Source: Pecten maximus
Lineage: Eukaryota
NCBI RefSeq assembly: GCF_902652985.1
Contig: NC_047015.1
Location: forward strand, 36,766,001-36,830,000
DNA length: 64,000 nucleotides
Direction: 5' to 3'
In this document: positions 15,201 through 42,800 of the stretch, one piece after another
How the letters are laid out: the number at the start of each line of letters is the position of its first letter
Position numbering within the stretch: the first letter of the stretch is position 1
Made by a program: the position numbers and the translations under genes
The notes under the pieces: generated by a model
What the model was told of the DNA's origin: nothing
Seen by the model: only the letters and a program-made list of their open reading frames with translations
Databases searched by the model: none

Positions 15201-15666
15201 TAAATGAGTGATGGGTATAATTATCATAGTAGAATTTGTAAGCATTGTCGCTGGACTGCAATAAACATGGGTGGGTTTATTACCAGACATGTGCTGATTG
15301 TGGGATAAATACGGCATCAGTACTAAATTTGACATTTTAATTTGGATACCATTCTAGTTGACCAACATCATCTATACTTGCTTGTGTATTCTATTGTGTA
15401 TATGTGTGAGGTAGTTCTTTAAACCATTATCATATGCTCAAACATGAAATCTGTGCTTACCCACAGTTTCCTTTAAACTCACCAAACTCATAAAATAGCT
15501 GTTGAAGAGAAAAACTAAAACCTTAAGAAATAATTCATCACTAGAAGTCTTTCCAAAGTTCATTCAAACCATTGAAAAAATATTAATTCTTATATCAGAT
15601 TTATTACTAAATTACCTCATTACAAAATGTGTATTTGAGCATATGATTACGGTATCGTATAATATG

Positions 15667-18389
15667 GGCCGTATTGTGACAGGTGTCCCTGGTCCTATTG
15701 TGACAGGTATATCTGGCCCTATTGTGACAGGTATATTTGGCCCTATTGTGACAGGTATATCTGGCCCTATTGTGACAGGTATATCTGGCCCTATTGTGAC
15801 AGGTGTCCCTGGTCCTATTGTGACAGGTATATCTGGCCCTATTGTGACAGGTATATCTGGCCCTATTGTGACAGGTATCCCCAGTCCTATTGTGACAGGT
15901 ATACCTGACCTTATTGTGACAGGTATATTTGGCCCTATTGTGACAGGTATATCTGGCCCTATTGTGACAGGTATACCTGGCCCTATTGTGACAGGTATAC
16001 CTGGCCCTATTGTGACAGGTATCCCTGGTCCTATTGTGACAGGTATACCTGGCCCTATTGTGACAGGTATCCCTGGTCCTATTGTGACAGGTATACCTGG
16101 CCCTATTGTGACAGGTATAACTGGTCCTATTGTGACAGGTATACCTGGTCCTATTGTGACAGGTATCCCTGGTCCTATTGTGACAGGTATCCCTGGCCCT
16201 ATTGTGACAGGTATACCTGGCCCTATTGTGACAGGTATCTCTGACCCTATTGTGACAGGTATCTCTGGTCCTATTGTGACAGGTATCCCTGGCCCTATTG
16301 TGACAGGTATACCTGGCCCTATTGTGACAGGTATGCCTGGCCCTATTGTGACAGGTATACCTGACCCTATTGTGACAGGTATACCTGACCCTATTGTGAC
16401 AGGTATCCCTGGCCCTATTGTGACAGGTATACCTGGCCCTATTGTGACAGGTATATCTGGCCCTATTGTGACAGGTATACCTGACCCTATTGTGACAGGT
16501 ATACCTGACCCTATTGTGACAGGTATATCTGGCCCTATTGTGACAGGTATACCTGGCCCTATTGTGACAGGTATACCTGGCCCTATTGTGACAGGTATCC
16601 CTGGTCCTATTGTGACAGGTATACCTGGCCCTATTGTGACAGGTATCTCTGGCCCTATTGTGACAGGTATACCTGACCCTATTGTGACAGGTATACCTGA
16701 CCCTATTGTGACAGGTATACCTGGCCCTATTGTGACAGGTATACCTGGCCCTATTGTGACAGGTATACCTGACCCTATTGTGACAGGTATACCTGACCCT
16801 ATTGTGACAGGTATCCCTGGCCCTATTGTGACAGGTATACCTGGCCCTATTGTGACAGGTATCTCTGACCCTATTGTGACAGGTATCTCTGGCCCTGTTG
16901 TGACAAGTATCTCTGGCCCTATTGTGACCGGTATATCTGGCCCTATTGTGACAGGTATCTCTGGCCCTATTGTGACAGGTATCTCTGGCCCTGTTGTGAC
17001 AGGTATCTCTGGCCCTATTGTGACAGGTATCTCTGGCCCTGTTGTGACAGGTATCTCTGGCCCTATTGTGACAGGTATACCTGGCCCTATTGTGACAGGT
17101 ATCTCTGGTCCTATTGTGACAGTTATATCTGGCCCTGTTGTGACAGTTATATCTGGCCCTATTGTGACAGGTATCTCTGGCCGTATTGTGACAGGTATAT
17201 CTGGTCCTATTGTGACAGGTATACCTGGCCCTATTGTGACAGGTATCTCTGGCCCTATTGTGACAGGTATCTCTGGCCCTATTGTGACAGGTATCTCTGG
17301 CCCTGTTGTGACAGGTATATCTGGCCCTATTGTGACAGGTATCTCTGGCCCTATTGTGACAGGTATCTCTGGCCCTATTGTGACAGGTATCTCTGGCCCT
17401 ATTGTGACAGGTATATCTGGCCCTATTGTGACAGGTATCTCTGGCCCTATTGTGACAGGTATATCTGGCCCTATTGTGACAGGTATATCTGGTCCTATTG
17501 TGACAGGTATCTCTGGCCCTATTGTGACAGGTATCTCTGGCCCTATTGTGACAGGTATCTCTGGCCCTATTGTGACAGGTATATCTGGTCCTATTGTGAC
17601 AGTTATATCTGGCCCTGTTGTGACAGTTATATCTGGCCCTATTGTGACAGGTATCTCTAGCCCTATTATGACAGGTATACCTGGCCCTATTGTGACAGGT
17701 ATACCTGGCCCTATTGTGACAGGTATACCTGGCCCTATTGTGACAGGTATCTCTGGTCCTATTGTGACAGTTATATCTGGCCCTGTTGTGACAGTTATAT
17801 CTGGCCCTATTGTGACAGGTATCTCTGGCCCTATTATGACAGGTATACCTGGCCCTATTGTGACAGGTATACATGGCCCTATTGTGACAGGTATCTCTGG
17901 CCCTATTGTGACAGGTATACCTGGCCCTATTGTGACAGGTATACATGGCCCTATTGTGACAGGTATCTCTGGCCCTATTGTGACAGGTATACCTGGCCCT
18001 ATTGTGACAGGTATCTCTGGCCCTATTGTGACAGGTATACCTGGCCCTATTGTGACCGGTATCTCTGGCCCTATTGTGACAGGTATCTCTGGCCCTATTG
18101 TGACAGGTATCTATGTCCCTACTGTGACAGGTATCTATGTCCCTACTGTGACAGGTATCTCTGGTCCTATTGTGACAGGTATATCTGGCCCTATTGTGAC
18201 AGGTATACCTGTTCCTATTGTGACAGGTATATCTGGCCCTATTGTGACAGGTATCCCTGGTCCTATTGTGACAGGTATATCTGGCCCTATTGTGACAGGT
18301 ATACCTGTTCCTATTGTGACAGGTATATCTGGCCCTATTGTGACAGGTATCTCTGGCCCTATTGTGACAGGTATCCCTGGTCCTATTGT
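15667..18389. repeat. 24-bp minisatellite ATTGTGACAGGTATATCTGGCCCT, ~113 copies
   Basis: direct reading; source of the 964-aa and 779-aa pseudo-ORFs. Confidence 0.97.
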
Positions 18390-18777
18390 GTTGTGATTTG
18401 GTTCATATCCTAAATATGGTATAATACCAATTTGGATAGGAGATATTTTCTAGTTCCAGAACATCATCACCTATAACTGCCATCATATTTCAGGATGGCA
18501 CAGTGTCTTATCATTAAAATCTCAGTCTCAACTCAATAGTTATTATTCCATATCATTCTCAAACTTTCCTTATAGAAAGCAGAGTGTTGTATATAAATTA
18601 TGTGCCACCCCACTATATAGAGTTATAGCCCTTTGTCGAAATTGTCATGATAAATTTCTAACTTTTTTCTCAGTGTAATAATGTAATTTCCTCAGAGAAA
18701 ACATAAATGTCATAGTTTGATTGTTCAGAAATCTTGAGCAGTATATTTGTATTTAATGATTATCATTTTAATTACAG

Positions 18778-24800: not shown

Positions 24801-27800
24801 TTCCCTATAATCTCACCTGTAATAATAATATCTGATTTTTGTTTTTGTCCACAGATGGGTTTCACTCCTCTGTACATGGCAGCACAAGAGGGTCACTCAG
24901 AAGTGGTCAAGTTTCTGCTGGCTAGTGGAGCAAACCAGAGTCTGGCCACAGCTGTAAGTTTGCCAATCTAACCAATGATTAATGGCTGGCTGTTTGACAG
25001 TGATGTCAAGCTGTCATACTCATTTGGTCCATTAAACCGTGATTTGACAGTGATGTCAAGCTGTCATACTCATTTGGTCCATTAAACCGTGATTTGACAG
25101 TGACGTCAAGCTGTCATACTCATTTGGTCCATTAAACCGTGATTTGACAGTGATGTCAAGCTGTCATACTCATTTGGCCCATTAAACCATAATTTGATAT
25201 CTCATTGTCATTTAAATCACATCTTCAAAAAGCCTTCATTACAGACAGTTCAAGAGTGATTGTATTGATTCAGAGAAAATGTATAGAGTGTTCTAGCTCT
25301 GATTCTTACTTTTTCATCCTCAATATTATGAAGAAATATTTATACACATTTTTCATAATCACATTTTGTTTCAAGTATGTTTGTGAAAATATGTAAACGT
25401 TCATGGAAAGATGTAATATTTTCCTCTTGTATCAGATCATATTCCAGCTTTTTAACAAACATTTTTTCAGGATGGATTCACTCCTTTGGCTGTAGCTCTT
25501 CAGCAGGGACATGAACGGGTTGTAAGCTGCCTTCTAGAGCATGACACAAAAGGGCGTGTCCGTCTGCCAGCATTGCACATCGCAGCAAAGAAGGATGACA
25601 TAAAATCGGCAGCCCTTCTCCTTCAGAATGAACAGAACAACGTAGACTCCCAAACTAAGGTAAAACTTCTATGTTCATGGTTACCCCACTGTTTTATATT
25701 TAGACATAGACACGGCTGTGGCTGACCATTCCCGCTGGCATATCTATATTCATTATGTGTTAACAAAGTTGTCTTTTAAGATGCATGTTTCGTATTTTCG
25801 ACAATCGTATTGTGTTCTTACCTTTGATCAATAAATCTGTTAGTGTGTGGTAAAATTGACAGAAACTCAGCAATCACTATTCTTCTCTTCTGTCGTTAAT
25901 TAAACATCTTTTCAAAATTAAAAAACTACATGTATAATTTCCAGGCATTATTCAAAGATAACATTTTATTTCGAAGTATTAAAATTTGTATATGAATTTT
26001 CTTGCTTTATTTTAAGCATCAAGCAAAAAATTGGAGTTTGTTTCAAAGATCATAAAAATATGTCAGTATTGAGATAGAAACAAATTTAATTGACTCCTCA
26101 ATTAACAATAATATTGTGATAGTATTATATTGTCTGAAGCATATTGAAACATTGTCCATATTCTTATAACCATGCTAAACAGAGCGGCAGTTTGGTTAAC
26201 GACACCACCAAGGTTTGTATCCATGGCAACTGTCTCAATTTGTCTTTGTTAGTCTGAAGTTTGAGTTCGCTGTGGAATTTCTCCGTCACAGGAAACTTTT
26301 TGCTGAATCTTTTTATCTTTCCTCACTTTTCCAAGTTATCGTGTGTTAATTTCAGTTTTTGTGGTTTCATACATTATACATTTATTTATTTTTCAAATTT
26401 GTTATGCTTTTAATTTTTCTTTGAATTTTATTTTAGAGATAACTTTATATGTTCAACTTTTAATTTTCTCTCATATCTCTATGATCTCTATGTATTGTAA
26501 ATTTCTAATGTAAAGTTATACTGTTTTTTGTCTCCAAAGCATTATTCAGATGTATTTATTTAATGTTTTTTATCTGCTTTATGTAGATTATGTAATTCAT
26601 AAGTTGCAACTGTCCATTTCCTATTTTGACTATTTTACCAAAAGATCCGAGTGTTATTTGTTATTTTTGTACCAGTGATTCAGATACCAGTATGTATAAT
26701 TGTAGGGATATAATTAAGATATCAGTGTTTTCAGTTAATTGTGTTTTCCATTGTAAGAGTTTCATGGAATGTTCACCTATCTACCTAGATATGAAAGCCT
26801 TCATGTATATCAGTCAGCCTTATTATCCCTGAAACTTACACAAATTCCTTGCATAGAACTGTACATTATCTTAATCAAATCTTATATAGAAAGGAAAATT
26901 CAACCTCTCAAAACATATGCAATTTTCTTTGAATTAAAAAAGAAGAAAAGATTTTACCTCAATTTTTCATTTTTAAGAAATACATTTTTTTAAGCCAACA
27001 GTTTTGTTTTTTGTTATGGTTTGAGCTTGAGATTTTGAGATTGAAATATTGATGGGTATTAATAAATGATGATTTTTACAAGTTTTGTGGTATGGGTGAA
27101 GTGTGATTATGTTGAGGGTCATTTCTAACGAGAAAGTATTGTATAATGTTTAGTTATAAATCTACCTGTTGGTTGATTTTCATGTCATTTTGTCTGTAAA
27201 TGTTCTCTCTGTTTATATTTTCTTTTCTACTGAATTTAAACTGATGTAGAATCTATTCTTCTGATTTTTTTAAAATTTCTTTATAGAATTTCATCTGCAG
27301 AAACTAAAGTTCTCTTCTGAATTAAAATTCATAACATAGGCTAGACTAACAATGCTGAAAACATTATTTTATTTTAAGAAATAAAAAAGAATGTGATGAG
27401 GGAAAGACAAGGTCTAGCATCACTGTGTATAGTGGTGTGAGGATAGGGTATTGAATATTTGGTGGAATCTCAAGCTTGGGAAAATGTGAAATGCTTATTG
27501 CAGCTGCTGCAGATAAGAGGGGATAATTGTCTTGGATATGTAGTAGCTGAGAAACTGGATGTTTCTGTAACAACAGTCACAGATAACAATAGGTATACAC
27601 CTGTATCTCATGTATGGCAGGATCTGTGAGGGACTTATACATGTTATACATATACAGGGCCTGTCAGGCGTTTACATGTTATACATGTACAGGGCCTGTC
27701 ATGGTCTTACATTTTATACATGTATAGGGCCTCTCTGGGAATTGTATCTTATACAATTTGTGGGGCCTGTTGGGGACTTCTATTTGATACATGTGTGGGG

Positions 27801-30800
27801 CCTGTCAGGGATTCAAATCTTATACATGCAGATGGCTAATAAAAGATTAAATCATAAACATGTAAAGGGCCTGTCAGGGACTTACTGGTTTATCTTACAC
27901 ATGGATGGGGCCTGTCAGGCCTCGCACTTACCGGTTTATCTTACACATGGATGGGGCCTGCCAGGGACTTACTGGTTTATCTTACACATGGATGGGGCCT
28001 GTCAGGGACTTACTGGTTTATCTTACACATGGCTGGGGCCTGCCAGGGACTTACTGGTTTATCTTACACATGGATGGGGCCTGCCAGGGACTTACTGGTT
28101 TATCTTACACATGGATGGGGCCTGTCAGGGACTTACTGGTTTATCTTACACATGGATGGGGCCTGACAGGGACTTACTGGTTTATCTTACACATGGATGG
28201 GGCCTGACAGGGACTTACTGGTTTATCTTACACATGGATGGGGCCTGTCAGGGACTTACTGGTTTATCTTACACATGGATGGGGCCTGCCAAGGACTTAC
28301 TGGTTTATCTTACACATGGATGGGGCCTGCCAGGGACTTACTGGTTTATCTTACACATGGATGGGGCCTGTCAGGGACTTACTGGTTTATCTTACACATG
28401 GATGGGGCCTGTCAGGGACTTACTGGTTTATCTTACACATGGATGGGGCCTGTCAGGGACTTACTGGTTTATCTTACACATGGATGGGGCCTGCCAGGGA
28501 CTTAACGGTTTATCTTACACATGGATGGGGCCTGTCAGGCCTCACACTTACCGGTTTATCTTACACATGGATGGGGCCTGTCAGGGACTTACTGGTTTAT
28601 CTTACACATGGATGGGGCCTGTCAGGGACTTGCTAGTTTATCTTACACATGAATGGGGCCTGTCAGGGACTTAACGGTTTATCTTACACATGTCTGTCAG
28701 AGATTAATATATGATGTCAAATCTGCTATAGTGACAACCTGTTAATTAAGACCAACTGTCTATAAAGACCACTTTGAACATGTGATTGATATAGTCATAA
28801 TATTTCAACCTGGCTTTAAAGATTATCTGCCTACAAAGACTTGGTCCATTGAGAGGTCTTTTTAGACAGATTTTACTGTACATGTGCAGGGCCTATCAAG
28901 GACTTATGTCTTACACATGTTTTGGCTTCTGTCAGAGATTCACATCTTAATATATGTATAGGGCCTGTCAGTGAATTATATCCTATACATGCACAGGCTC
29001 TATGAGAGACTCATATCTTATACATGTACTGGGCTTGTCAGGGACTTGAATCTTATACATGTACTAGACTTGTCAGGACTTAAATCTTATACATGTACAG
29101 GGCCTGTCAGAGATTCACATGCATAGGGCCTCTCAGAGATTCACATCTTGTACATGCACTGGGCCTGTCAGTGGTCTTACCAGTACAAGCACAGGGTGTA
29201 TGAGACTCAATTAAGGGGCTTCTCATGTGATATATGTAGGGTTGATCACATATAGCACAGCAGTAACAACGTGCTGTATTAACCTAGTAATGAATGGTCA
29301 TTCACAGGAACATACTGGACCTATAATTGGTAACAGTGTTTCAGAATTATTTACAGACATATATTTTAGGCATCACAAAATAAATGGTGATGCATTTTGT
29401 AATTTGTAATATCACATGAAAGATGTTTTCTGGATATTTACAGCTAAGAGGTCCTGGTGAACAGTGTTAATCACACTCTACATACCTTACACATTATAAT
29501 ATAGATAGTGTCACGCCTGCAAAATACACATAGATTTTTAACTTGAACAACAAATGGCCAGATTTTTATTATATTTTGGGACAGATACAGGTATAAGTAT
29601 TCTATCTGTGTGAACTGTAAGCAACAGCGGGATGTTGTAGCTACAGATTAGGCTGGTTATACGGCTGTAATAGGTCTCTGATAGTTGATGGTGTTGTAAT
29701 GTTTTACTAAGTGATTCCTATCTACTAAGACAAGTCAGCTTGTTTGAAAAGGATGTTGTAATATACTGTAAACGGTTGTTTACTGCAGACATTTAACAAT
29801 TTCTAGATTAGCACTATGTTTATCAACTCACATTAGTATCAGTTTTTAAAACTGCAATTTTTTTTCTTCAAAAAATACCTCTGATTTCAAAAGTGATAAC
29901 ATAACACCCTATGCTTTGGAAGCATTTTGTTTTAGACATGTAACATGTTGTTATATATAGTACCAGGAGTATGCAAACTTTAATAGCCCAAATTTTTACA
30001 TGGATTTTTCTTTAGGCTGTTGAAGTTTATAGCCAGTATTTGTATTAAAGCAGAGATAGGAAGTGGGTTTTTTTTGTTGTGGGAAGGGGGTTTATATATA
30101 GCATACATGTATTCTCTATTGTCAGGCTATTTATATATATATATATATATAAAACAAAATTTTAAATAATACATTGTATTAAACGAATGAAATGTATAGA
30201 TTAATAAATTAAGAAGTAACCATTTGATGAAAAGTCAAATTCCATGAAGTGACAAAACCCTTTAGAAATTGATTTTAAGGAAATGAAGAAGTTTGTATAT
30301 AAAGAACAGTGAAGAATCTAAATCCAAGTTACACCTGAGTGAATCCCTGTGTTGGTTTAAATGTGTGAAATATTTTTCTGTATTTGATTGATATTCAACA
30401 TTCTGGATCTCTTTTGATTCTTTTTCCATTTTATTTGATGGAATTTTCTTATAGATAATTGAATGGAAGATAAATTATTTTGAATTAATTGTAATTAAAT
30501 GGAATTCATTTCTTTTTGTTAACTGGTCCTTAATTTTTTGTGAAATTTTGAATAATGTAATAAGTATTATGGTGATGGCAAATCAACACTTTATGAAGAT
30601 GTGTCTCCTTTTAGACACATGATATTTGAATTAAAACTGGGAAGCTGCTTATTACAATATATCACATTTAAAACATATTCATAATTAAAAGGACTAATTG
30701 GAGAGGCATAATTTAAATTTGATTTTGGAAAATAAGATGGATGAAAAAATAAAGGGAAAAAAAAAATTTAAAGAATAAATGATTATGATTTATTTTCAGA

Positions 30801-33800
30801 GTGGATTCACTCCCTTGCACATTGCTGCTCACTATGGCAACATAAATGTGGGCTCACTTCTCATCTCCAAAGGAGCAGACGTCAACTACAAGGCCAAGGT
30901 CAGTGATTATCACAGTTTGACTTTGAAAAACAAACATGACAATAACTTTATTATACATGTTTTGTTTTACCTACACAATTATTATAGAGATTTGAGAATA
31001 CAAATACTAGATTTAAGTACACATGTAATGTCATAACAGTACACATGTAATGTCATAACAGTACACATGTAGTGTCATAACAGTACACATGTAGTGTCAT
31101 AACAGTACACATATAATGTCATAACAGTACACATGTAGTGTCATAACAGTAAGGTATTATACCCACCAGTACACATGTAATGTCATAACAGTGCACATGT
31201 AGTGTCATAACAGTAAGGTATAATACCCACCAGTACACATGTAATGTCATAACAGTGAGGTATTATACCCACCAGTACACATGTAATGTCATATAACAGT
31301 GAGGTATGATACCCACCAGTACACATGTAATGTCATAACAGTACACATGTAATGTCATAACAGTACACATGTAATGTCATAACAGTGAGGTATTATACCT
31401 ACCAGTACACATGTAATGTCATAACAGTGAGGTATAATACCTACCAGTACACATGTAATGTCATAACAGTACACATGTAATGTCATAACAGTGAGGTATT
31501 ATACCTACCAGTACACATGTAATGTCATAACAGTGAGGTATAATACCTACCAGTACACATGTAATGTCATAACAATACACATGTAATGTCATAACAGTGA
31601 GGTATAATACCCACCAGTACACATGTAATGTCATAACAGTAAGGTATTATACCCACCAGTACACATGTAATGTCATAACAGTAAGGTATAATACCCACCA
31701 GTACACATGTAATGTCATAACAGTACACATGTAATGTCATAACAGTAAGGTATAATACCCACCAGTACACCTGTAATGTCATAACAGTACACATGTAATG
31801 TCATAACAGTAAGGTATAATACCCACCAGTACACATGTAATGTCATAACAGTACACATGTAATGTCATAGCAGTACACATGTAATGTCATAACAGTAAGG
31901 TATAATACCCACCAGTACACATGTAATGTCATAACAGTACACATGTAATGTCATAACAGTAAGGTATTATACCCATCAGTACACCTGTAATGTCATAACA
32001 GTACAGATGTAATGTCATAACAGTAAGGTATAATACCCACCAGTACACATGTAATGTCATAACAGTACACATGTAATGTCATAACAGTACACATGTAATG
32101 TCATAACAGTGAGGTATTATACCCACCAGTACACATGTAATGTCATAACAGTACACATATAATGTAATAACAGTAAGGTGTTATACCCACCAGTACACAT
32201 GTAATGTCATAACAGTAAGGTGTTATACCCACCAGTACACATGTAATGTCATAACAGTAAGGTATAATACCCACCAATACACATGTAATGTCATAACAGT
32301 AAGTTATAATACCCACCAGTACACATGTAATGTCATAACAGTAAGGTATAATACCCACCAGTACACATGTAATGTCATAACAGTAAGTTATAATACCCAC
32401 CAGTACACATGTAATGTCATATAGCAGTGAGGTATGATACCCACCAGTACACATGTAATGTCATATAACAGTGAGGTATAATACCCACCAGTACACATGT
32501 AATGTCATAACAGTAAGGTATAATACCCACCAGTACACATGTAATGTCATAACAGTACACATGTAATGTCATATAACAGTGAGGTATAATACCCACCAGT
32601 ACACATGTAATGTCATAACAGTACACATGTAATGTCATAACAGTGAGGTATAATACCCACCAGTACACATGTAATGTCATAACAGTACACATGTAATGTC
32701 ATAACAGTGAGGTATAATACCCACCAGTACACATGTAATGTCATAACAGTAAGGTATTATACCCACCAGTACACATGTAATGTCATAACAGTAAGGTATT
32801 ATACCCACCAGTACACATGTAATGTCATAACAGTACACATGTAATGTCATAACAGTGAGGTATTATACCCACCAGTACACATGTAATGTCATAACAGTGA
32901 GGTATTATACCCACCAGTACACATGTAATGTCATAACAGTACACATGTAATGTCATAACAGTACACATGTAGTGTCATAACAGTGAGGTATTATACCCAC
33001 CAGTACACATGTAATGTCATAACAGTGAGGTATTATACCCACCAGTACACATGTAATGTCATAACAGTACACATGTAATGTCATAACAGTACACATGTAA
33101 TGTCATAACAGTGAGGTATTATACCCACCAGTACACATGTAATGTCATAACAGTGAGGTATAATACCCACCAGTACACATGTAATGTCATAACAGTACAC
33201 ATGTAATGTCATAACAGTACACATGTAATGTCATAACAGTGAGGTATAATACCCACCAGTACTCATGTAATGTCATAACAGTGAGGTATAATACCCACCA
33301 GTACACATGTAATGTCATATAGCATTGAGGTATGATACCCACCAGTACACATGTAATGTCATATAACAGTGAGGTATAATACCCACCAGTACACATGTAA
33401 TGTCATAACAGTGAGGTATAATACCCACCAGTACACATGTAATGTCATAACAGTACACATGTAATGTCATAACAGTAAGGTATAATACCCACCAGTACAC
33501 ATGTAATGTCAAAACAGTAAGTTATAATACCCACCAGTACACATGTAATGTCATATAACAGTGAGGTATAATACCCACCAGTACACATGTAATGTCATAA
33601 CAGTACACATGTTATGTCATAACAGTAAGGTATAATACCCACCAGTACACATGTAATGTCAAAACAGTAAGTTATAATACCCACCAGTACACATGTAATG
33701 TCATAACAGTGAGGTATAATACCCACCAGTACACATGTAATGTCATAACAGTAAGGTATAATACCCACCAGTACACATGTAATGTCATAACAGTAAGTTA

Positions 33801-36800
33801 TAGTAAGTTATGATACCCACCAGTACACATGTAATGTCATAACAGTAAGTTATAATACCCACCAGTACACATGTAATGTCATAGCAGTGAGATATTATAC
33901 CCACCAGTACACATGTAATGTCATAACAGTAAGGTATAATACCCACCAGTACACATGTAATGTCATAACAGTGAGGTGTTATACCCACCAATACACATGT
34001 AATGTCATAACAGTAAGGTATAATACCCACCAGTACACATGTAATGTCATAACAGTACACATGTAATGTCATAACAGTAAGGTATAATACCCACCAGTAC
34101 ACGTGTAATGTCATAACAGTGAGGTATTATACCCACCAGTACACATGTAATGTCATAACAGTAAGGTATTATACCCACCAGTACACATGTAATGTCATAA
34201 CAGTACACATGTAATGTCATAACAGTGAGGTATAATACCCACCAGTACACATGTAATGTCATAAGAGTGAGGTATAATACCCACCAGTACACATGTAATG
34301 TCATAACAGTGAGGTATTATACCCACCAGTACACATGTAATGTCATAACAGTACACATGTAATGTCATAACAGTGAGGTATTATACCCACCAGTACACAT
34401 GTAATGTCATAACAGTAAGGTATTATACCCACCAGTACACATGTAATGTCATAACAGTGAGGTATAATACCCACCAGTACACATGTAATGTCATAACAGT
34501 AAGTTATTATACCCACCAGTACACATGTAATGTCATAACAGTAAGGTATAATACCCACCAATACACATGTAATGTCATAACAGTAAGTTATAATACCCAC
34601 CAGTACACATGTAATGTCATAACAGTAAGGTATAATACCCACCAGTACACATGTAATGTCATAACAGTGAGGTATTATACCCACCAGTACACATGTAATG
34701 TCATAACAGTGAGGTATAATACCCACCAGTACACATGTAATGTCATAACAGTACACATGTAATGTCATAACAGTGAGGTATAATACCTACCAGTACACAT
34801 GTAATGTCATAACAGTACACATGTAATGTCATAACAGTGAGGTATAATACCCACCAGTACACATGTAATGTCATAACAGTAAGGTATAATACCCACCAGT
34901 ACATATGTAATGTCATAACAGTGAGGTATTATACCCACCAGTACACATGTAATGTCATAACAGTACACATGTAATGTCATAACAGTACACATGTAATGTC
35001 ATAACAGTAAGGTATAATACCCACCAGTACACATGTAATGTCATAACAGTGAGGTATTATACCCACCAGTACACATGTAATGTCATAACAGTGAGGTATT
35101 ATACCCACCAGTACACATGTAATGTCATAACAGTAAGTTATAATACCCACCAGTACACATGTAATGTCATAACAGTAAGGTGTTATACCCACCAGTACAC
35201 ATGTAATGTCATAACAGTAAGTTATAATACCCACCAGTACACATGTAATGTCATAACAGTAAGGTATAATACCCACCAGTACACATGTAATGTCATAACA
35301 GTAAGGTATTATACCCACCAGTACACATGTAATGTCATAACAGTACATATGTAATGTCATAACAGTAAGGTGTTATACCCACCAGTACACATGTAATGTC
35401 ATAACAGTAAGGTATAATACCCACCAGTACACATGTAATGTCATAACAGTAAGGTATTATACCCACCAGTACACATGTAATGTCATAACAGTACACATGT
35501 AATGTCATAACAGTAAGTTATAATACCCACCAGTACACATGTAATGTCATAACAGTAAGGTATTATACCCACCAGTACACATGTAATGTCATAACAGTAA
35601 GGTGTTATACCCACCAGTACACATGTAATGTCATAACAGTAAGGTATAATACCCACCAGTACACATGTAATGTCATAACAGTAAGGTATAATACCCACCA
35701 GTACACATGTAATGTCATAACAGTAAGTTATAATACCCACCAGTACACATGTAATGTCATAACAGTAAGGTATAATACCCACCAGTACATATGTAATGTC
35801 ATAACAGTAAGGTATTATACACACCAGTACACATGTAATGTCATAACAGTAAGTTATAATACCCACCAGTACACATGTAATGTCATAACAGTACACATGT
35901 AATGTCATAACAGTGAGGTATAATACCCACCAGTACACATGTAATGTCATAACAGTACACATGTAATGTCATAACAGTAAGGTATAATACCCACCAGTAC
36001 ACATGTAATGTCATGTAATGTGAACTGAATGTTTCAGAACAACATCACACCCCTCCATGTGTCATCACGATGGGGCAAGGACAAGATGGTTATCTTACTG
36101 CTGGACAACAAAGCTTCCATTGACGAACGGACAAGGGTGAGTTGTCTTACGATTGAATGTGTATTTCTCTTAACAGACCAATGTGTTTACATGCCAAAAC
36201 AGATATTTACTAAAGCAATTCTGAACCTTATACATGTGAATTATAATGTGTTTTAAAAGATGTTGATGCTACTTTGAGCCCCTGATATCAGAGCTCTATT
36301 TCCTTCCCCAGGATGGACTGACTCCACTCCACTGTGCGGCCAGAAGTGGGCATGAGAATGTGGTGGACCTTCTCCTAGAGAGGGGAGCGCCCTTCTCAAG
36401 TAAAACTAAGGTCAGTATATGCTATCTTATCTGATGCCTGATTTCTTTTCACAGTGGATCTTAATCAAAACATTTCTCGATCATCAAATAAACAATGATT
36501 GATGTGAGATGATGTTGACGAGCAAACTTATTAACTTAAGGACAAATAATCATGTACATCTAATGTTAATGGTAAATTGGTCAATATAGATGTTTGTTCT
36601 AAAAAAGAACTGAATTAAAATTTATTATTATGTAAATAAATACTGTTTTTTCCATAGAATGGCCTGACCCCTCTACACATGGCTGCCCAGGGTGACCATA
36701 TGGACTGTGCTCGCCTTCTTCTCTACCACAGGGCACCAGTCGATGATGTCACAGTAGTTAGTATATATGTATATATATACTCTTTTTGACTTTGTGGTCC

Positions 36801-39800: not shown

Positions 39801-42800
39801 ATAGCACCTCTGAGTCAGTGTGTGGCGCAGCACTTGATATTGATCCTTTGTGCCAGTGACTGGTGCAGGCCAGTTCTATTGATTTTGTTTGTGTGTAGTG
39901 TTAGACACATTCTGTGGAAATCCTTCTGCTGTATATACACCATGTATATCATGAATACTGTCTGTCCAAAATACAAACCTATTCTCAATATGGCATCATA
40001 TGGTATCAGTAATGTAAATGCTACATTTCAAGTTTTCATGGGAATTGACTTACATCGGACACAATATTTGTGGGATAAACATATTGTTTCAGCATTATAA
40101 TTTTGCTGACTCTAGCCATTTTCAATACTACATACAGCAGACGGAACCCGGCTCAGTACAATATAGATAAATAAATTGTTTGCAGTGGTGGACCTACAGC
40201 TTGGATGAATGTTTTACTCCCACATACTGTAAACTTATTAGAGAGAAACCGTAATTCTGTTCTTTTAAATATCTGTAGTAAAGGGAAACATTTGACTAAG
40301 TAAGATGAAATGTTTGAACTATTTTTTGAACCGAAAAAAACCCACCTTATCTCTTCAAATAATTGTGGTGAATAGCAAACCTGTTTTATAATATTTCATT
40401 TGTAATGAATAAAATTACACTGTGATAATATTACATATATAATATAGATATATGTATATAATAAAGCAGAGGGGGGATAGTCATCACTGGGTTAACATCT
40501 TAGGTGGATTATGGGTTCCTCGGCCCCTCATCTGGATACCTTGAGGTATGCAGGTTGATTGAAGGATGAGTTAAATGTCCTGAAGAAACCCAAGAGGGCG
40601 AAACCAGTCAACAGAATAAATTGATGAACCAGGCCTCTCCTCCTGTGGTGATTGACTTCTACTCACTCATATATTTGATATTGCAGTAAATGGAAACCTT
40701 CCTCTGTTAAAATTTTATGATATGAATTCTTAACATTCTGTGAATTTTTGATAAATTTTGTTATTTCTGAAAAAGTGGTTTAAATGTTTGTAGTGGATAG
40801 ACAGCTGACAGTTTAATGAAGTTCCTATGTACTGCTATATCACTACAATATTGCTGTCTCAAAGCGGTTCACAAATTATCATCCTGGTTGTCAGGCCTTC
40901 TCAGTGGAATGTTTGTTGTCCTACTCAGTAAAATGTTTGTTGTCCTACTCAGTAAAATGTTTGTTGTCCTACTCAGTGGAATGTTTGTTGTCCTACTCAG
41001 TAAAATGTTTGTTGTCCTACTCAGTAAAATGTTTGTTGTCCTACTCAGTGGAATGTTTGTTGTCCTACTCAGTAAAATGTTTGTTGTCCTACTCAGTGAT
41101 ATGTTTGTTGTCCTACTCAGTGGAATGTTTGTTGTCCTACTCAGTGAAATGTTTGTTGTCCTACTCAGTAAAATGTTTGTTGTCCTACTCAGTGGAATGT
41201 TTGTTATCCTACTCAACAAAATGTTTGTTATCCTACTCAGTGAAATGTTTGTTGTCCTACTCAGTGGAATGTTTGTTGTCCTACTCAGTAAAATGTTTGT
41301 TGTCCTACTCAGTGGAATGTTTGTTATCCTACTCAACAAAATGTTTGTTGTCCTACTCAGTGAAATGTTTGTTGTCCTACTCAGTAAAATGTTTGTTGTC
41401 CTACTCAGTAAAATGTTTGTTGTCCTACTCAGTGAAATGTTTGTTGTCCTACTCAGTAGAATGTTTGTTGTCCTACTCAGTAGAATGTTTGTTGTCCTAC
41501 TCAGTAAAATGTTTGTTGTCCTACTCAGTAGAATGTTTGTTGTCCTACTCAATAGAATGTTTGTTGTCCTACTCAGTAGAATGTTTGTTGTCCTACTCAG
41601 TAAAATGTTTGTTGTCCTACTCAGTGGAATGTTTGTTGTCCTACTCAGTAAAATGTTTGTTGTCCTACTCAGTAGAATGTTTGTTGTCCTACTCAACAAA
41701 ATGTTTGTTGTCCTACTCAGTGGAATGTTTGTTGTCCTACTCAGTAAAATGTTTGTTGTCCTACTCAGTGGAATGTTTGTTATCCTACTCAGTAAAATGT
41801 TTGTTGTCCTACTCAGTGAAATGTTTGTTGTCCTACTCAGTGGAATGTTTGTTGTCCTACTCAGTAAGATGTTTGTTATTCTACTCAGTAAAATGTTTGT
41901 TATTCTACTCAACAAAATGTTTGTTGTCCTACTCAACAAAATGTTTGTTGTCCTCGTCAGTGAAATGTTTGTTGTCCTACTCAGTAAAATATTTGTTGTT
42001 CTGCCTGGTAAAATGTTTGAAGTAGACAAGCTGTACTGGGGAGTTGCAGACATACTGAGTAATTAATAGGTTGATGTCCCTAGCTCCTCTGCCTGCTGTT
42101 GTTGTGTTTTATGTCTACCTGCCAATTTGTGTGTGATGTACTCTGTCAAGTGTTATGGCGGCCGGTTGCATGGCAGCAAAAATATAGCAGTGCTTGCTGT
42201 CTTATAAATGACATGGAATTAGACCCAGAAGACTGGACAGAAATCTACATGAATGTCTGTATAATGCTTCCCAATAATGAGCGACTTGAGTCACTGTGTA
42301 TGTAATTTATTCAAGGATGTGAGAGAGCATTCATCAACCACACCCCAATACACAAAGTAAACTTCAAATATAGCCTGGAGAGGAGAACAAGTACTGAGAC
42401 ATTGTTATCTTGAAATAAACCAACACACATGTACTGTTAAATGTACAGTTTAGTGCTGTTCTCCTTAACATATCCTTTCCATCAGGCTCCCAACCCCTGA
42501 TAAGGTCGACTTATCGAGGTGTCATTTACAGCAGGTGTGTTATAAAGCAGATATGTACATAGTGAAGACAGGAGACAGAACAGAGAGGGGTGGGGGTTCC
42601 CTTACCCTATAACCCCAGGAGACAGAACAGAGAGGGGTGGGGGTTCCCTTACCCTATAACCCTAGGAGACAGAACAGAGAGGGGTTGGGGTTCCCTTACC
42701 CTATAACCCTAGGAGACAGAACAGAGAGAGGGGGGGGGGGGGGTCCCTTACCCTTTAACCCTAGGAGACAGAACAGAGAGGGGTTGGGGTTCCTTTACCC

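What the first reader, a model, noticed from the sequence alone, without database searches (positions are those of the whole stretch)
26160..26230. 30-nt microexon between ANK6 and ANK7, apparently homologous to the vertebrate ANK2 'MMVNRTTE' microexon
Seen: ...catgctaaacAG|AGCGGCAGTTTGGTTAACGACACCACCAAG|GTttgt, frame-preserving, encoding [10 protein letters not shown], with UGC at 26173 and U-rich sequence downstream. Known (from memory): human ankyrin-B has an alternatively spliced insert MMVNRTTE at this junction ([20 protein letters not shown]), and neural microexons are activated by SRRM3/4 (eMIC) via upstream UGC. Inference: LVNDTTK versus MVNRTTE at the same intron position suggests an ancestral bilaterian neural microexon that remodels the ANK groove. 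It is too short for the ORF track and easily missed in annotation.
Basis: partly seen in the sequence, partly recalled or inferred. Interest (0 to 1): 0.8.

Follow-up and report, generated by a model that had tools for sequence, protein, structure and literature searches.

The report
Conserved optional 30-base ankyrin exon
A 30-base optional exon in a scallop ankyrin gene adds ten amino acids between ankyrin repeats 6 and 7; other molluscs and a ribbon worm carry the same insert, and chordate ankyrins have a similar eight-residue insert at the same spot, though shared ancestry is unproven.

Summary
Window 26183-26212 (+) is an open 30-nt segment between AG and GT, inside the 5,140-nt intron between the exons for ankyrin repeats 5-6 and repeat 7.

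It is almost certainly a real exon of this gene lineage.
- The identical peptide [10 protein letters not shown] sits at exactly this junction in annotated ankyrins of two other scallop genera and a nemertean.
- xGGLVNDTTK variants occur in oysters, mussels, clams, gastropods and octopus.
- Skipped isoforms are also annotated in Octopus and Mya.

In this species I saw only skipping. Contigs of three runs from three studies join 25659 directly to 30800, but contigs drop minor isoforms.

Human AnkB (PDB 4rlv) has 8 extra residues at the same junction. Fetched vertebrate, tunicate and amphioxus proteins show MMVNRTTE or WAVNAATE there.

Homology of the two inserts is plausible but not shown.
- Echinoderm, arthropod, nematode and flatworm isoforms lack any insert.
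- The peptide resembles an ordinary ankyrin-repeat tail, so convergence is a live rival.

Neural specificity and eMIC control are untested. The UGC and the "U-rich" flank are within chance.

The parts
25471..25659 (+). Upstream constitutive exon (189 nt) encoding ankyrin repeats 5 and 6, ending ...NNVDSQTK in phase 0
   Evidence: 100% identical over 63 aa to Ylistrum balloti P0170 residues 148-210. RNA contigs of X2, X3 and X10 cover it. It matches human AnkB 4rlv_A 204-259.
25660..30799 (+). Intron removed as one piece (GT..AG, 5140 nt) in the skipped isoform; it contains the microexon and a tandem repeat at about 27610-28674
   Evidence: joint 25657>30798 (cut +2), one contig in each of X2, X3 and X10. 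One search shows the repeat ORFs.
26173..26175 (+). TGC 7 nt upstream of the acceptor AG, the only candidate SRRM-type motif; not above chance
   Evidence: 11.7% of all AGs in the window have a TGC in the preceding 20 nt.
26163..26182 (+). Weak 3' splice site: pyrimidine fraction 0.60, purine-rich ...gctaaacAG
   Evidence: the 10 constitutive ANK exons range from 0.55 to 0.90.
26183..26212 (+). 30-nt cassette microexon encoding [10 protein letters not shown]
   Evidence: The identical peptide sits at this junction in P0170 (Ylistrum balloti), P0181 (Mizuhopecten yessoensis) and P0183 (Tubulanus polymorphus). Near-identical peptides occur in about 20 further mollusc species.
26213..26218 (+). 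5' splice site AAG|GTTTGT, atypical (T at +3 and +4) compared with the gene's other donors
   Evidence: the other donors are GTAAxx, GTCAGT, GTAGGT, GTATGT, and one GTTAGT.
30800..30898 (+). Downstream constitutive exon (99 nt) encoding ankyrin repeat 7, [14 protein letters not shown]...
   Evidence: It matches 4rlv_A 269-300 and ANK1 7tw3_G 205-235.

Best explanation
Window 26183-26212 is a genuine, evolutionarily conserved, alternatively spliced 30-nt cassette exon of the scallop's canonical (giant) ankyrin gene. When included, it inserts ten residues ([10 protein letters not shown]) exactly between ankyrin repeats 6 and 7, in the hairpin 'finger' loop that joins two repeats and lines the target-binding inner groove. 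The inserted peptide has the pattern of an ordinary repeat tail (xGxxVNxxTK). Inclusion therefore gives repeat 6 a second, canonical-looking tail and lengthens that finger, which lies between the groove's binding site 1 (Phe131/Phe164 in R4-R5) and site 2 (Ile267/Leu300 in R8-R9). It probably tunes which membrane partners bind. Both splice sites are weak, so inclusion should need an activator. In the transcript assemblies I could see, the exon is skipped. Shown: the sequence, conservation in annotated proteins of other molluscs and a nemertean, annotated inclusion and skipping in relatives, and skipping in this species. Inferred: inclusion in this species, the effect on the groove, and dependence on a tissue-specific activator.
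For: Sequence and frame. Cross-species: the identical [10 protein letters not shown] lies between ...TK and SGFTPLH in Ylistrum balloti P0170, Mizuhopecten yessoensis P0181 and Tubulanus polymorphus P0183; all 15 Tubulanus isoforms read have it. Variants: TGGLVNDTTK in 5 oyster species, 11 of 11 proteins read. DGGLVNDTTK in Mytilus trossulus and M. californianus; VGGLVNDTTK in Potamilus; a 9-aa GGLVNDTTK in Biomphalaria. GGGLVNDTTK or GAGLVNDTTK in Dreissena, Mya, Ruditapes and Mercenaria; SGGLVNDTTK in Babylonia, Nucella, Octopus bimaculoides and O. vulgaris. Alternative use in relatives: Octopus bimaculoides has both forms; Mya arenaria has 14 isoforms with the insert and 1 without; Arion vulgaris (6 of 6) and Sinanodonta (2 of 2) are annotated without it. 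P0170 maps collinearly on the window, residues 148-210 to 25471-25659 and 221-253 to 30800-30898, which leaves residues 211-220 for the candidate. The site is unique in the genome. Splice sites are weak relative to the gene's other exons. Finger loops plus alphaA helices form the target groove (PMC4358367, passages read).
Against: No RNA evidence of inclusion in this species. The only contigs that cross the junction (one each in runs X2, X3 and X10, three studies) join 25659 to 30800, and no contig of the 4 runs covers 26056-26244. No protein of this species appeared in either of the two mollusc-query protein searches, so I cannot say whether its own annotation includes the exon. Public gene models are predictions, and I could not see the RNA support behind them. 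The structural effect is inferred and was not modelled.
Confidence: 0.87

Rival explanations
1. The lophotrochozoan 10-residue exon and the chordate 8-residue exon (MMVNRTTE) descend from one exon already present in the bilaterian ancestor, later lost in ecdysozoans, echinoderms and flatworms.
For: Same junction and phase: 4rlv_A has 8 extra residues between chain residues 260 and 269, while ANK1 7tw3_G has none. Isoforms with and without the insert differ exactly between K and S in both lineages. Lengths are similar (24 against 27-30 nt). The core [LM]VN[DR]TT[KE] is shared. The mollusc peptide scores 18-20 against MMVNRTTE, above all 62 ordinary repeat tails in four ankyrins (maximum 15), and the match is rare among random candidates. 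The insert is present in all three chordate subphyla: Clavelina has MMVNRTTE and Branchiostoma has WAVNAATE in 6 of 6.
Against: The distribution is patchy. There is no insert in 76 echinoderm cluster members of 5 species, nor in the further echinoderm rows (8 species in all). None appears in 13 of 13 crab isoforms or 15 of 15 spider isoforms, in the many insects, in Trichuris or in two trematodes. Two gains are as parsimonious as one gain plus three or more losses. Scored the other way, [10 protein letters not shown] matches ordinary ANK tails (up to 23) as well as it matches the vertebrate exon (22) and better than amphioxus (12). A recent preprint (10.64898/2026.09.05.749416, passages read) reports that neural exons often arise repeatedly at equivalent positions, and infers only two bilaterian-ancestral ones (APBB1/2/3 and MADD).
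Confidence: 0.45
2. The two inserts arose independently, once in stem chordates and once within Lophotrochozoa. In each case a tail-like segment was recruited into the same intron, and both were shaped towards the ANK-tail pattern by the fold.
For: The patchy distribution. The tail-like pattern of the peptide. The exon's last 24 nt plus donor match the ends of other ANK exons of this gene as well as or better than they match the upstream exon: R22 18 of 30, R7 17 of 30, upstream exon 13 of 30. Recurrent exon gain at equivalent positions is described in print (passages; PMC8797185).
Against: The mollusc exon is the single best match to MMVNRTTE among all tails and all window candidates. The junction, phase and size class are identical. 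No donor sequence for an independent origin was identified.
Confidence: 0.42
3. It is a neuron-specific microexon switched on by the eMIC domain of Srrm234 through the upstream UGC, as in vertebrate SRRM3/4 targets.
For: Size, frame preservation and weak splice sites fit. A UGC lies 7 nt before the AG, inside the 2-20 nt range quoted for SRRM4 (PMC12148930 passage). The exon is skipped in the three runs seen, which would fit non-neural or mixed tissue. eMIC-type regulation is reported as ancestral to bilaterians (PMC8797185 passages).
Against: The UGC is within chance (11.7% of AGs, 2 of 10 constitutive exons). There is no GCATG within 250 nt, and the downstream flank is not U-rich. The tissues of the runs are unknown. 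In Mya (14 of 15) and Tubulanus (15 of 15) most annotated isoforms include the exon, which does not look like a rare neural form. The SRRM4/MBNL-dependent Ank2 microexon characterised in PMC12148930 is a different 12-nt exon near S901. I found nothing in print on regulation of the R6/R7 exon.
Confidence: 0.3
4. In this species the segment is never spliced in: either a chance open frame or a silent relic.
For: Only skipped contigs were seen, and no contig lies over the segment. The donor GTTTGT and the purine-rich acceptor are weak.
Against: All 10 codons are identical at protein level to two other scallop genera, and both splice dinucleotides are intact inside a 5-kb intron. Contigs cannot show absence (text).
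Confidence: 0.08

Closest known systems
Chordate ANK2/ANK3 optional 8-residue insert (MMVNRTTE and variants) between ankyrin repeats 6 and 7
   Same: Same junction (after ...SK/TK, before SGFTPLH) and same phase, both frame-preserving. It is optional in both lineages. The hVNxTT[EK] core is shared. The insert is present in the crystallised human AnkB construct 4rlv_A (8 extra residues) and in fish, frog, shark, tunicate and amphioxus proteins.
   Different: It is 24 nt against 30 nt (27 in Biomphalaria). The mollusc form has an extra N-terminal xG(G/S) and ends in K rather than E. Common descent is unproven. Vertebrates also have longer variants ([20 protein letters not shown]).
Annotated ankyrin isoforms of other molluscs and a nemertean (public RefSeq/GenBank gene models, e.g. 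Ylistrum balloti, Mizuhopecten yessoensis, Magallana gigas, Mytilus, Octopus bimaculoides, Tubulanus polymorphus)
   Same: The same exon, with an identical or near-identical peptide at the same junction.
   Different: Those are gene models of other species. Here the exon is read from the genome, and its inclusion in this species has not been seen.
Neural microexons controlled by SRRM3/4 (the eMIC domain of Srrm234)
   Same: Short, frame-preserving, with weak splice sites, in a neuronal scaffold gene, and with a UGC near the 3' splice site.
   Different: Tissue specificity and eMIC dependence are untested, and the UGC is within chance. The Ank2 microexon shown to depend on SRRM4/MBNL is a different 12-nt exon (PMC12148930). 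None of the four exons shared by the fly and mouse programmes is in ankyrin (PMC8797185).
Bilaterian-ancestral microexons in APBB1/2/3 (6 nt) and MADD (9 nt)
   Same: Candidate for an optional microexon kept since before the protostome-deuterostome split.
   Different: Those two were inferred with tissue-resolved RNA-seq across 20 species (preprint 10.64898/2026.09.05.749416, passages). The ankyrin exon is not named in the passages I read, is missing from insects and echinoderms, and has no tissue data here. That preprint's supplementary tables were not open to me.

Membership tests
Alternative cassette microexon | Very short (about 3-30 nt), a multiple of three, open in the frame of the flanking exons | tested here: met
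   30 nt, phase 0 on both sides, no stop.
Alternative cassette microexon | Canonical AG and GT at its borders | tested here: met
   AG at 26181-82 and GT at 26213-14. Both sites are weak compared with the gene's other exons.
Alternative cassette microexon | Transcripts that skip it | tested here: met
   Joint 25659>30800 in one contig each of X2, X3 and X10. Skipped isoforms are annotated in Octopus, Mya, Arion and Sinanodonta.
Alternative cassette microexon | Transcripts of this species that include it | tested here: inconclusive
   No contig of the 4 runs lies on 26056-26244.
Alternative cassette microexon | Orthologous exon in relatives | tested here: met
   Identical peptide in two scallop genera and a nemertean. 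Near-identical peptide in oysters, mussels, clams, gastropods and octopuses.
Orthologue of the chordate ANK2/ANK3 R6/R7 insert | Same intron position and phase | tested here: met
   (4rlv_A residues 260 to 269) and isoform pairs.
Orthologue of the chordate ANK2/ANK3 R6/R7 insert | Sequence similarity beyond what the protein context gives | tested here: inconclusive
   The mollusc peptide scores above random candidates (36 of 2000 shuffles; 1 of 4130) and above all ordinary tails when MMVNRTTE is the probe (18-20 against a maximum of 15). With [10 protein letters not shown] as the probe, ordinary tails score up to 23 against 22 for the vertebrate exon.
Orthologue of the chordate ANK2/ANK3 R6/R7 insert | Presence in the lineages between chordates and lophotrochozoans | tested here: not met
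   No insert in the listed isoforms of 8 echinoderm species, the arthropods listed, Trichuris and two trematodes. Annotation only: their introns were not searched.
eMIC (SRRM3/4, Srrm234)-dependent neural microexon | UGC within about 20 nt upstream of the 3' splice site | tested here: inconclusive
   Present at 26173-75, but so it is before 11.7% of all AGs and before 2 of 10 constitutive exons.
eMIC (SRRM3/4, Srrm234)-dependent neural microexon | Inclusion restricted to neurons | not testable with these tools
   Run tissues are coded, only contigs were available, and the one reads call is used.
eMIC (SRRM3/4, Srrm234)-dependent neural microexon | Loss of inclusion when the eMIC domain is removed | not testable with these tools
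   Needs an experiment.

The most novel reading that the evidence does not exclude
The ankyrin repeat-6/7 microexon is a single exon older than the protostome-deuterostome split. On this reading it was kept optional for more than 600 million years in chordates, molluscs and nemerteans and lost in ecdysozoans, echinoderms and flatworms. It would be switched on in neurons by the ancestral eMIC programme to retune the ankyrin target groove. It would join APBB1/2/3 and MADD, the only two exons that a recent preprint infers to be bilaterian-ancestral neural exons, and it lies in the master organiser of excitable membrane domains.
Probability: 0.18. Interest if true: 0.7.

Novelty: new member of a known kind. 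Interest (0 to 1): 0.45.

Why it matters
Ankyrins tether ion channels and adhesion molecules to the spectrin skeleton through the inner groove of their 24 repeats. [quoted passage not shown] An optional insert in one finger of that groove, present in chordates, molluscs and a nemertean, is a rare way for the "invariant" domain to vary.

If the two inserts share an ancestor, this would add a structurally interpretable case to the very short list of microexons older than Bilateria. It would also point to an ancient isoform-specific partner. If they arose twice, it is a clean example of convergent exon gain at one structural hot spot.

For annotation, it shows that the scallop gene should carry an inclusion isoform like its relatives.

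Tried and rejected
- **RNA reads.** The look-up of sequencing runs offered only Logan contigs, with no tissue labels. Read laying showed only the skipped joint. X1 gave only short intronic contigs at depth 2-7 and none on the exons, so it says nothing about splicing.
- **Origin by duplication of the upstream exon's end.** Rejected as specific evidence. Nucleotide identity is 13 of 30, no better than to other ANK exon ends of the gene (6-18 of 30).
- **UGC and U-rich flank as regulatory evidence.** Both are within background. There is no GCATG or CTAAC within 250 nt.
- **Paralogous copy in the genome.** None; the pattern hits once.
- **Literature.**
  - Peptide strings gave 0 papers.
  - 'ankyrin' + 'microexon' gave 67 papers. 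In the 25 listed titles and abstract starts, none concerns this junction.
  - The unc-44 paper listed there has no 'microexon' in the text held.
  - The Ank3 E35a paper and the Ank2 12-nt microexon papers concern other exons.
  - The AnkB structure paper does not contain the word 'insertion', and its one splicing passage is general.
  - I did not see Torres-Mendez et al. 2019 (recalled only; not found).
- **This species' own proteins.** None appeared, so its annotation stayed unchecked.
- **Cross-species intron alignment.** Not possible, because no relative genomes are held (text).
- **Structure prediction.** Not run, because no natural mollusc protein of 1200 aa or fewer with the insert was in hand.
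- **Regex failure.** One search's regular expression matched nothing. It was redone.
Full report
**What is in the sequence**

- The window carries, on the + strand, the 5' part of a canonical ankyrin gene.
I did not test the species name. The closest proteins I found are from other scallops.
- Mapping the Ylistrum balloti ankyrin P0170 on the window gives collinear exons for repeats 1 to 24.
- Repeats 5 and 6 share one exon, 25471-25659, which ends ...NNVDSQTK in phase 0.
- Repeat 7 is exon 30800-30898 and starts SGFTPLH.
- Inside the 5,140-nt intron between them lies catgctaaacAG|AGCGGCAGTTTGGTTAACGACACCACCAAG|GTttgt. The exon is 26183-26212 and reads [10 protein letters not shown] in frame.

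**Is it more than chance?**

- The intron holds 165 AG..GT-bounded open segments of 9-60 nt whose length is a multiple of three.
- The candidate is the best of these against MMVNRTTE, with BLOSUM62 score 20 against 14 for the next.
- 36 of 2000 dinucleotide-preserving shuffles of the intron reach 20. Of 4130 such segments on both strands of the whole window, only this one reaches 18.
- A degenerate pattern for LVNDTTK followed by GT occurs once in the 918-Mb genome, at this site. The reversed control gives 0 hits.

**Relatives decide the matter**

I searched the exons apart and made no joined model. The exon for repeats 5-6 was run against 1.84 billion representative proteins.

The identical ten residues lie between ...TK and SGFTPLH in three species:
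- the scallop Ylistrum balloti (P0170);
- the scallop Mizuhopecten yessoensis (P0181);
- the nemertean Tubulanus polymorphus (P0183, and all 15 of its isoforms read).

Variants at the same junction:

| Insert | Species |
|---|---|
| TGGLVNDTTK | Saccostrea cucullata, S. echinata, Magallana gigas, Crassostrea angulata, C. virginica, Ostrea edulis |
| DGGLVNDTTK | Mytilus trossulus, M. californianus |
| GGGLVNDTTK | Dreissena, Mya |
| GAGLVNDTTK | Ruditapes, Mercenaria |
| VGGLVNDTTK | Potamilus |
| SGGLVNDTTK | Babylonia, Nucella, Octopus bimaculoides, O. vulgaris |
| GGLVNDTTK (9 aa) | Biomphalaria |

The exon is optional in relatives:
- Octopus bimaculoides has both forms.
- Mya arenaria has 14 isoforms with the insert and 1 without.
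- Arion vulgaris (6 of 6) and Sinanodonta woodiana (2 of 2) are annotated without it.

A ten-codon stretch with intact splice dinucleotides, kept identical among three scallop genera inside a long intron, is not a chance open frame.

**RNA of this species**

- The run search returned 24 runs, all kept as contigs, with coded samples.
- I laid four runs from four studies on 25300-30950.
- X2, X3 and X10 each have one long contig (1948, 2627 and 2757 nt) that joins 25659 to 30800 (GT..AG, 5140 nt skipped), with 101 nt on the shorter side.
- No contig of any run lies on 26056-26244.
- X1 has only short intron contigs at depth 2-7 and none on the exons.
- So the skipped form is the assembled, presumably major, form in three studies.
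- Inclusion was not seen. The tool states that contigs drop rare variants and show presence, not absence.
- The tissues are unknown to me.

**Splice signals**

- Constitutive ANK exons of the gene have pyrimidine-rich acceptors and GTAAxx, GTCAGT or GTAGGT donors.
- The candidate has a purine-interrupted acceptor (pyrimidine fraction 0.60 over 20 nt) and the unusual donor GTTTGT. This fits an exon that needs help to be included.
  - A TGC lies within 20 nt before 11.7% of all 3824 AGs on the + strand, and before 2 of 10 constitutive ANK exons.
  - The 60 nt downstream are 40% T against an intron mean of 36%, and 30% of intron windows are as rich or richer.
  - No GCATG lies within 250 nt.

**The vertebrate parallel**

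- In the crystallised human AnkB construct 4rlv_A, the upstream exon aligns to chain residues 204-259 and the downstream exon to 269-300. That leaves 8 extra residues.
- ANK1 (7tw3_G) has none: 148-198 upstream, then 205 onward.
- Fetched proteins show what the 8 residues are:
  - MMVNRTTE in ANK2 and ANK3 of fishes, a shark, frogs and mammals, with VMVNRTTE and LVVNRTTE in frogs;
  - MMVNRTTE in the tunicate Clavelina;
  - WAVNAATE in three Branchiostoma records.
- Isoforms without it are also present: of the non-echinoderm proteins tallied, 26 end ...ADVQSK and 52 carry ...[14 protein letters not shown].

**Is it one exon or two?**

For one origin:
- The junction, phase and size class are the same.
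- The core [LM]VN[DR]TT[KE] is shared.
- With MMVNRTTE as probe, the mollusc exon scores 18-20. That is above every one of the 62 ordinary repeat tails of a scallop, an octopus, an amphioxus and a vertebrate ankyrin (maximum 15).

Against one origin:
- The insert is missing from every listed isoform of these groups:

| Group | Isoforms without the insert |
|---|---|
| Anneissia | 15 of 15 |
| Antedon | 15 of 15 |
| Lytechinus pictus | 15 of 15 |
| Diadema antillarum | 15 of 15 |
| Acanthaster | 16 of 16 |
| L. variegatus, D. setosum, Apostichopus | all rows read |
| Crabs | 13 of 13 |
| A spider | 15 of 15 |
| Insects | all rows read |
| Trichuris, two trematodes | all rows read |

- With [10 protein letters not shown] as probe, ordinary tails score as high as the vertebrate exon: [10 protein letters not shown] 23, NGAGVNTKTK 22, RGSSVDASTK 21, against 22 for the vertebrate exon and 12 for amphioxus.
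- The peptide simply has the pattern of an ANK tail, xGxxVNxxTK.
- At nucleotide level, its last 24 nt plus donor match the ends of the R22 and R7 exons (18 and 17 of 30) better than the upstream exon (13 of 30).
- Selection for a foldable extension of a finger loop could therefore produce similar peptides twice.
- Print supports that such repeats happen.
  - PMC8797185 found only four exons at equivalent positions in the fly and mouse eMIC programmes, none in ankyrin, and favoured convergence for three of them.
  - A 2026 preprint reports frequent recurrent gain at equivalent positions and only two confidently bilaterian-ancestral neural exons, in APBB1/2/3 and MADD (passages only, supplements closed).
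- I put one origin at about 0.45 and two origins at about 0.42.
- Absence here means absence from annotation. The introns of those phyla could not be searched with the tools at hand.

**How it most likely works**

- Shown: the insert falls between the last residue of repeat 6 and the first of repeat 7.
- Established (PMC4358367, passages): a hairpin finger loop joins consecutive repeats. The fingers plus the alphaA helices form the inner groove that binds targets. The mutants used there place site 1 at Phe131/Phe164 in R4-R5 and site 2 at Ile267/Leu300 in R8-R9.
- Inferred: inclusion lengthens the R6-R7 finger by ten residues with a second tail-like unit. That would change the groove between sites 1 and 2, and so partner choice or autoinhibition.
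- Inferred: the weak sites make inclusion depend on a trans-acting activator. An eMIC-type factor is a reasonable candidate but is untested.

**What is known and what is new**

- The exon is already present in many public mollusc gene models, so it is not missed by annotation in general.
- I found nothing in print on it.
  - Peptide strings gave 0 papers.
  - None of the 25 listed of 67 'ankyrin' + 'microexon' papers deals with this junction.
- The Ank2 microexon characterised as SRRM4/MBNL-dependent in PMC12148930 is a different 12-nt exon near S901. The Ank3 E35a microexon lies elsewhere.
- The link between the lophotrochozoan and chordate inserts appears undescribed in what I could search.

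**Verdict**

- A real, conserved, optional exon: about 0.87.
- Interest is moderate.

Noticed in passing
Proteins P0189 and P0190 (Ostrea edulis isoforms X16, X15); vertebrate proteins: A second variable piece follows the insert at the same junction. Two oyster isoforms have six extra residues (DNHSVG) after TGGLVNDTTK. Some vertebrate ANK2 forms read [11 protein letters not shown] (3, 6) and one reads MMVNRTTEQ. The junction seems to be a hot spot for small additions in both lineages.
   Followed up: partly
window 26183-26212, compared with the ends of other ANK exons: The microexon peptide has the pattern of an ordinary ankyrin-repeat tail (xGxxVNxxTK). It scores 23 against the R22 tail [10 protein letters not shown]. 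Its last 24 nt plus donor match the R22 and R7 exon ends at 18 and 17 of 30. It looks like an extra repeat tail, not a foreign sequence.
   Followed up: partly
Proteins P0147 and P0164 (ENA contigs of 6.4 and 7.1 kb, unnamed organism): An 825-residue ORF has a 40-residue insert at the same junction that ends KLMINQTTE before SGFTALHIAA. Among the named proteins read, the ANK7 start SGFTALHIAA is otherwise seen in the tunicate Clavelina and in unnamed flatworm-type representatives. The organism was not identified and its sample was not sought.
   Followed up: no
window 25584: The run X3 contig reads G where the genome has A, at depth 45, in the third position of an alanine codon (GCA to GCG, synonymous). 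X2 and X10 read A. This is probably a polymorphism.
   Followed up: no
window 15502-18396, 27610-28674, about 31000-36000, 40816-42066: Four long tandem-repeat blocks lie inside introns of the ankyrin gene and show up as long repetitive ORFs in all frames. One of them sits in the same intron as the microexon.
   Followed up: no
window 25673-25866: Run X2 has a 194-nt contig at depth 13 that starts 14 nt into the intron just after the upstream exon, separate from the spliced contig. This may be retained intron or pre-mRNA.
   Followed up: no
Protein P0140 (Logan, 94 aa, seen on 20 contigs): An oyster-like fragment reads through the donor after ...NVDGQTK into VLKKRQGCLVY. It is therefore an unspliced copy of the same junction in another bivalve.
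   Followed up: no
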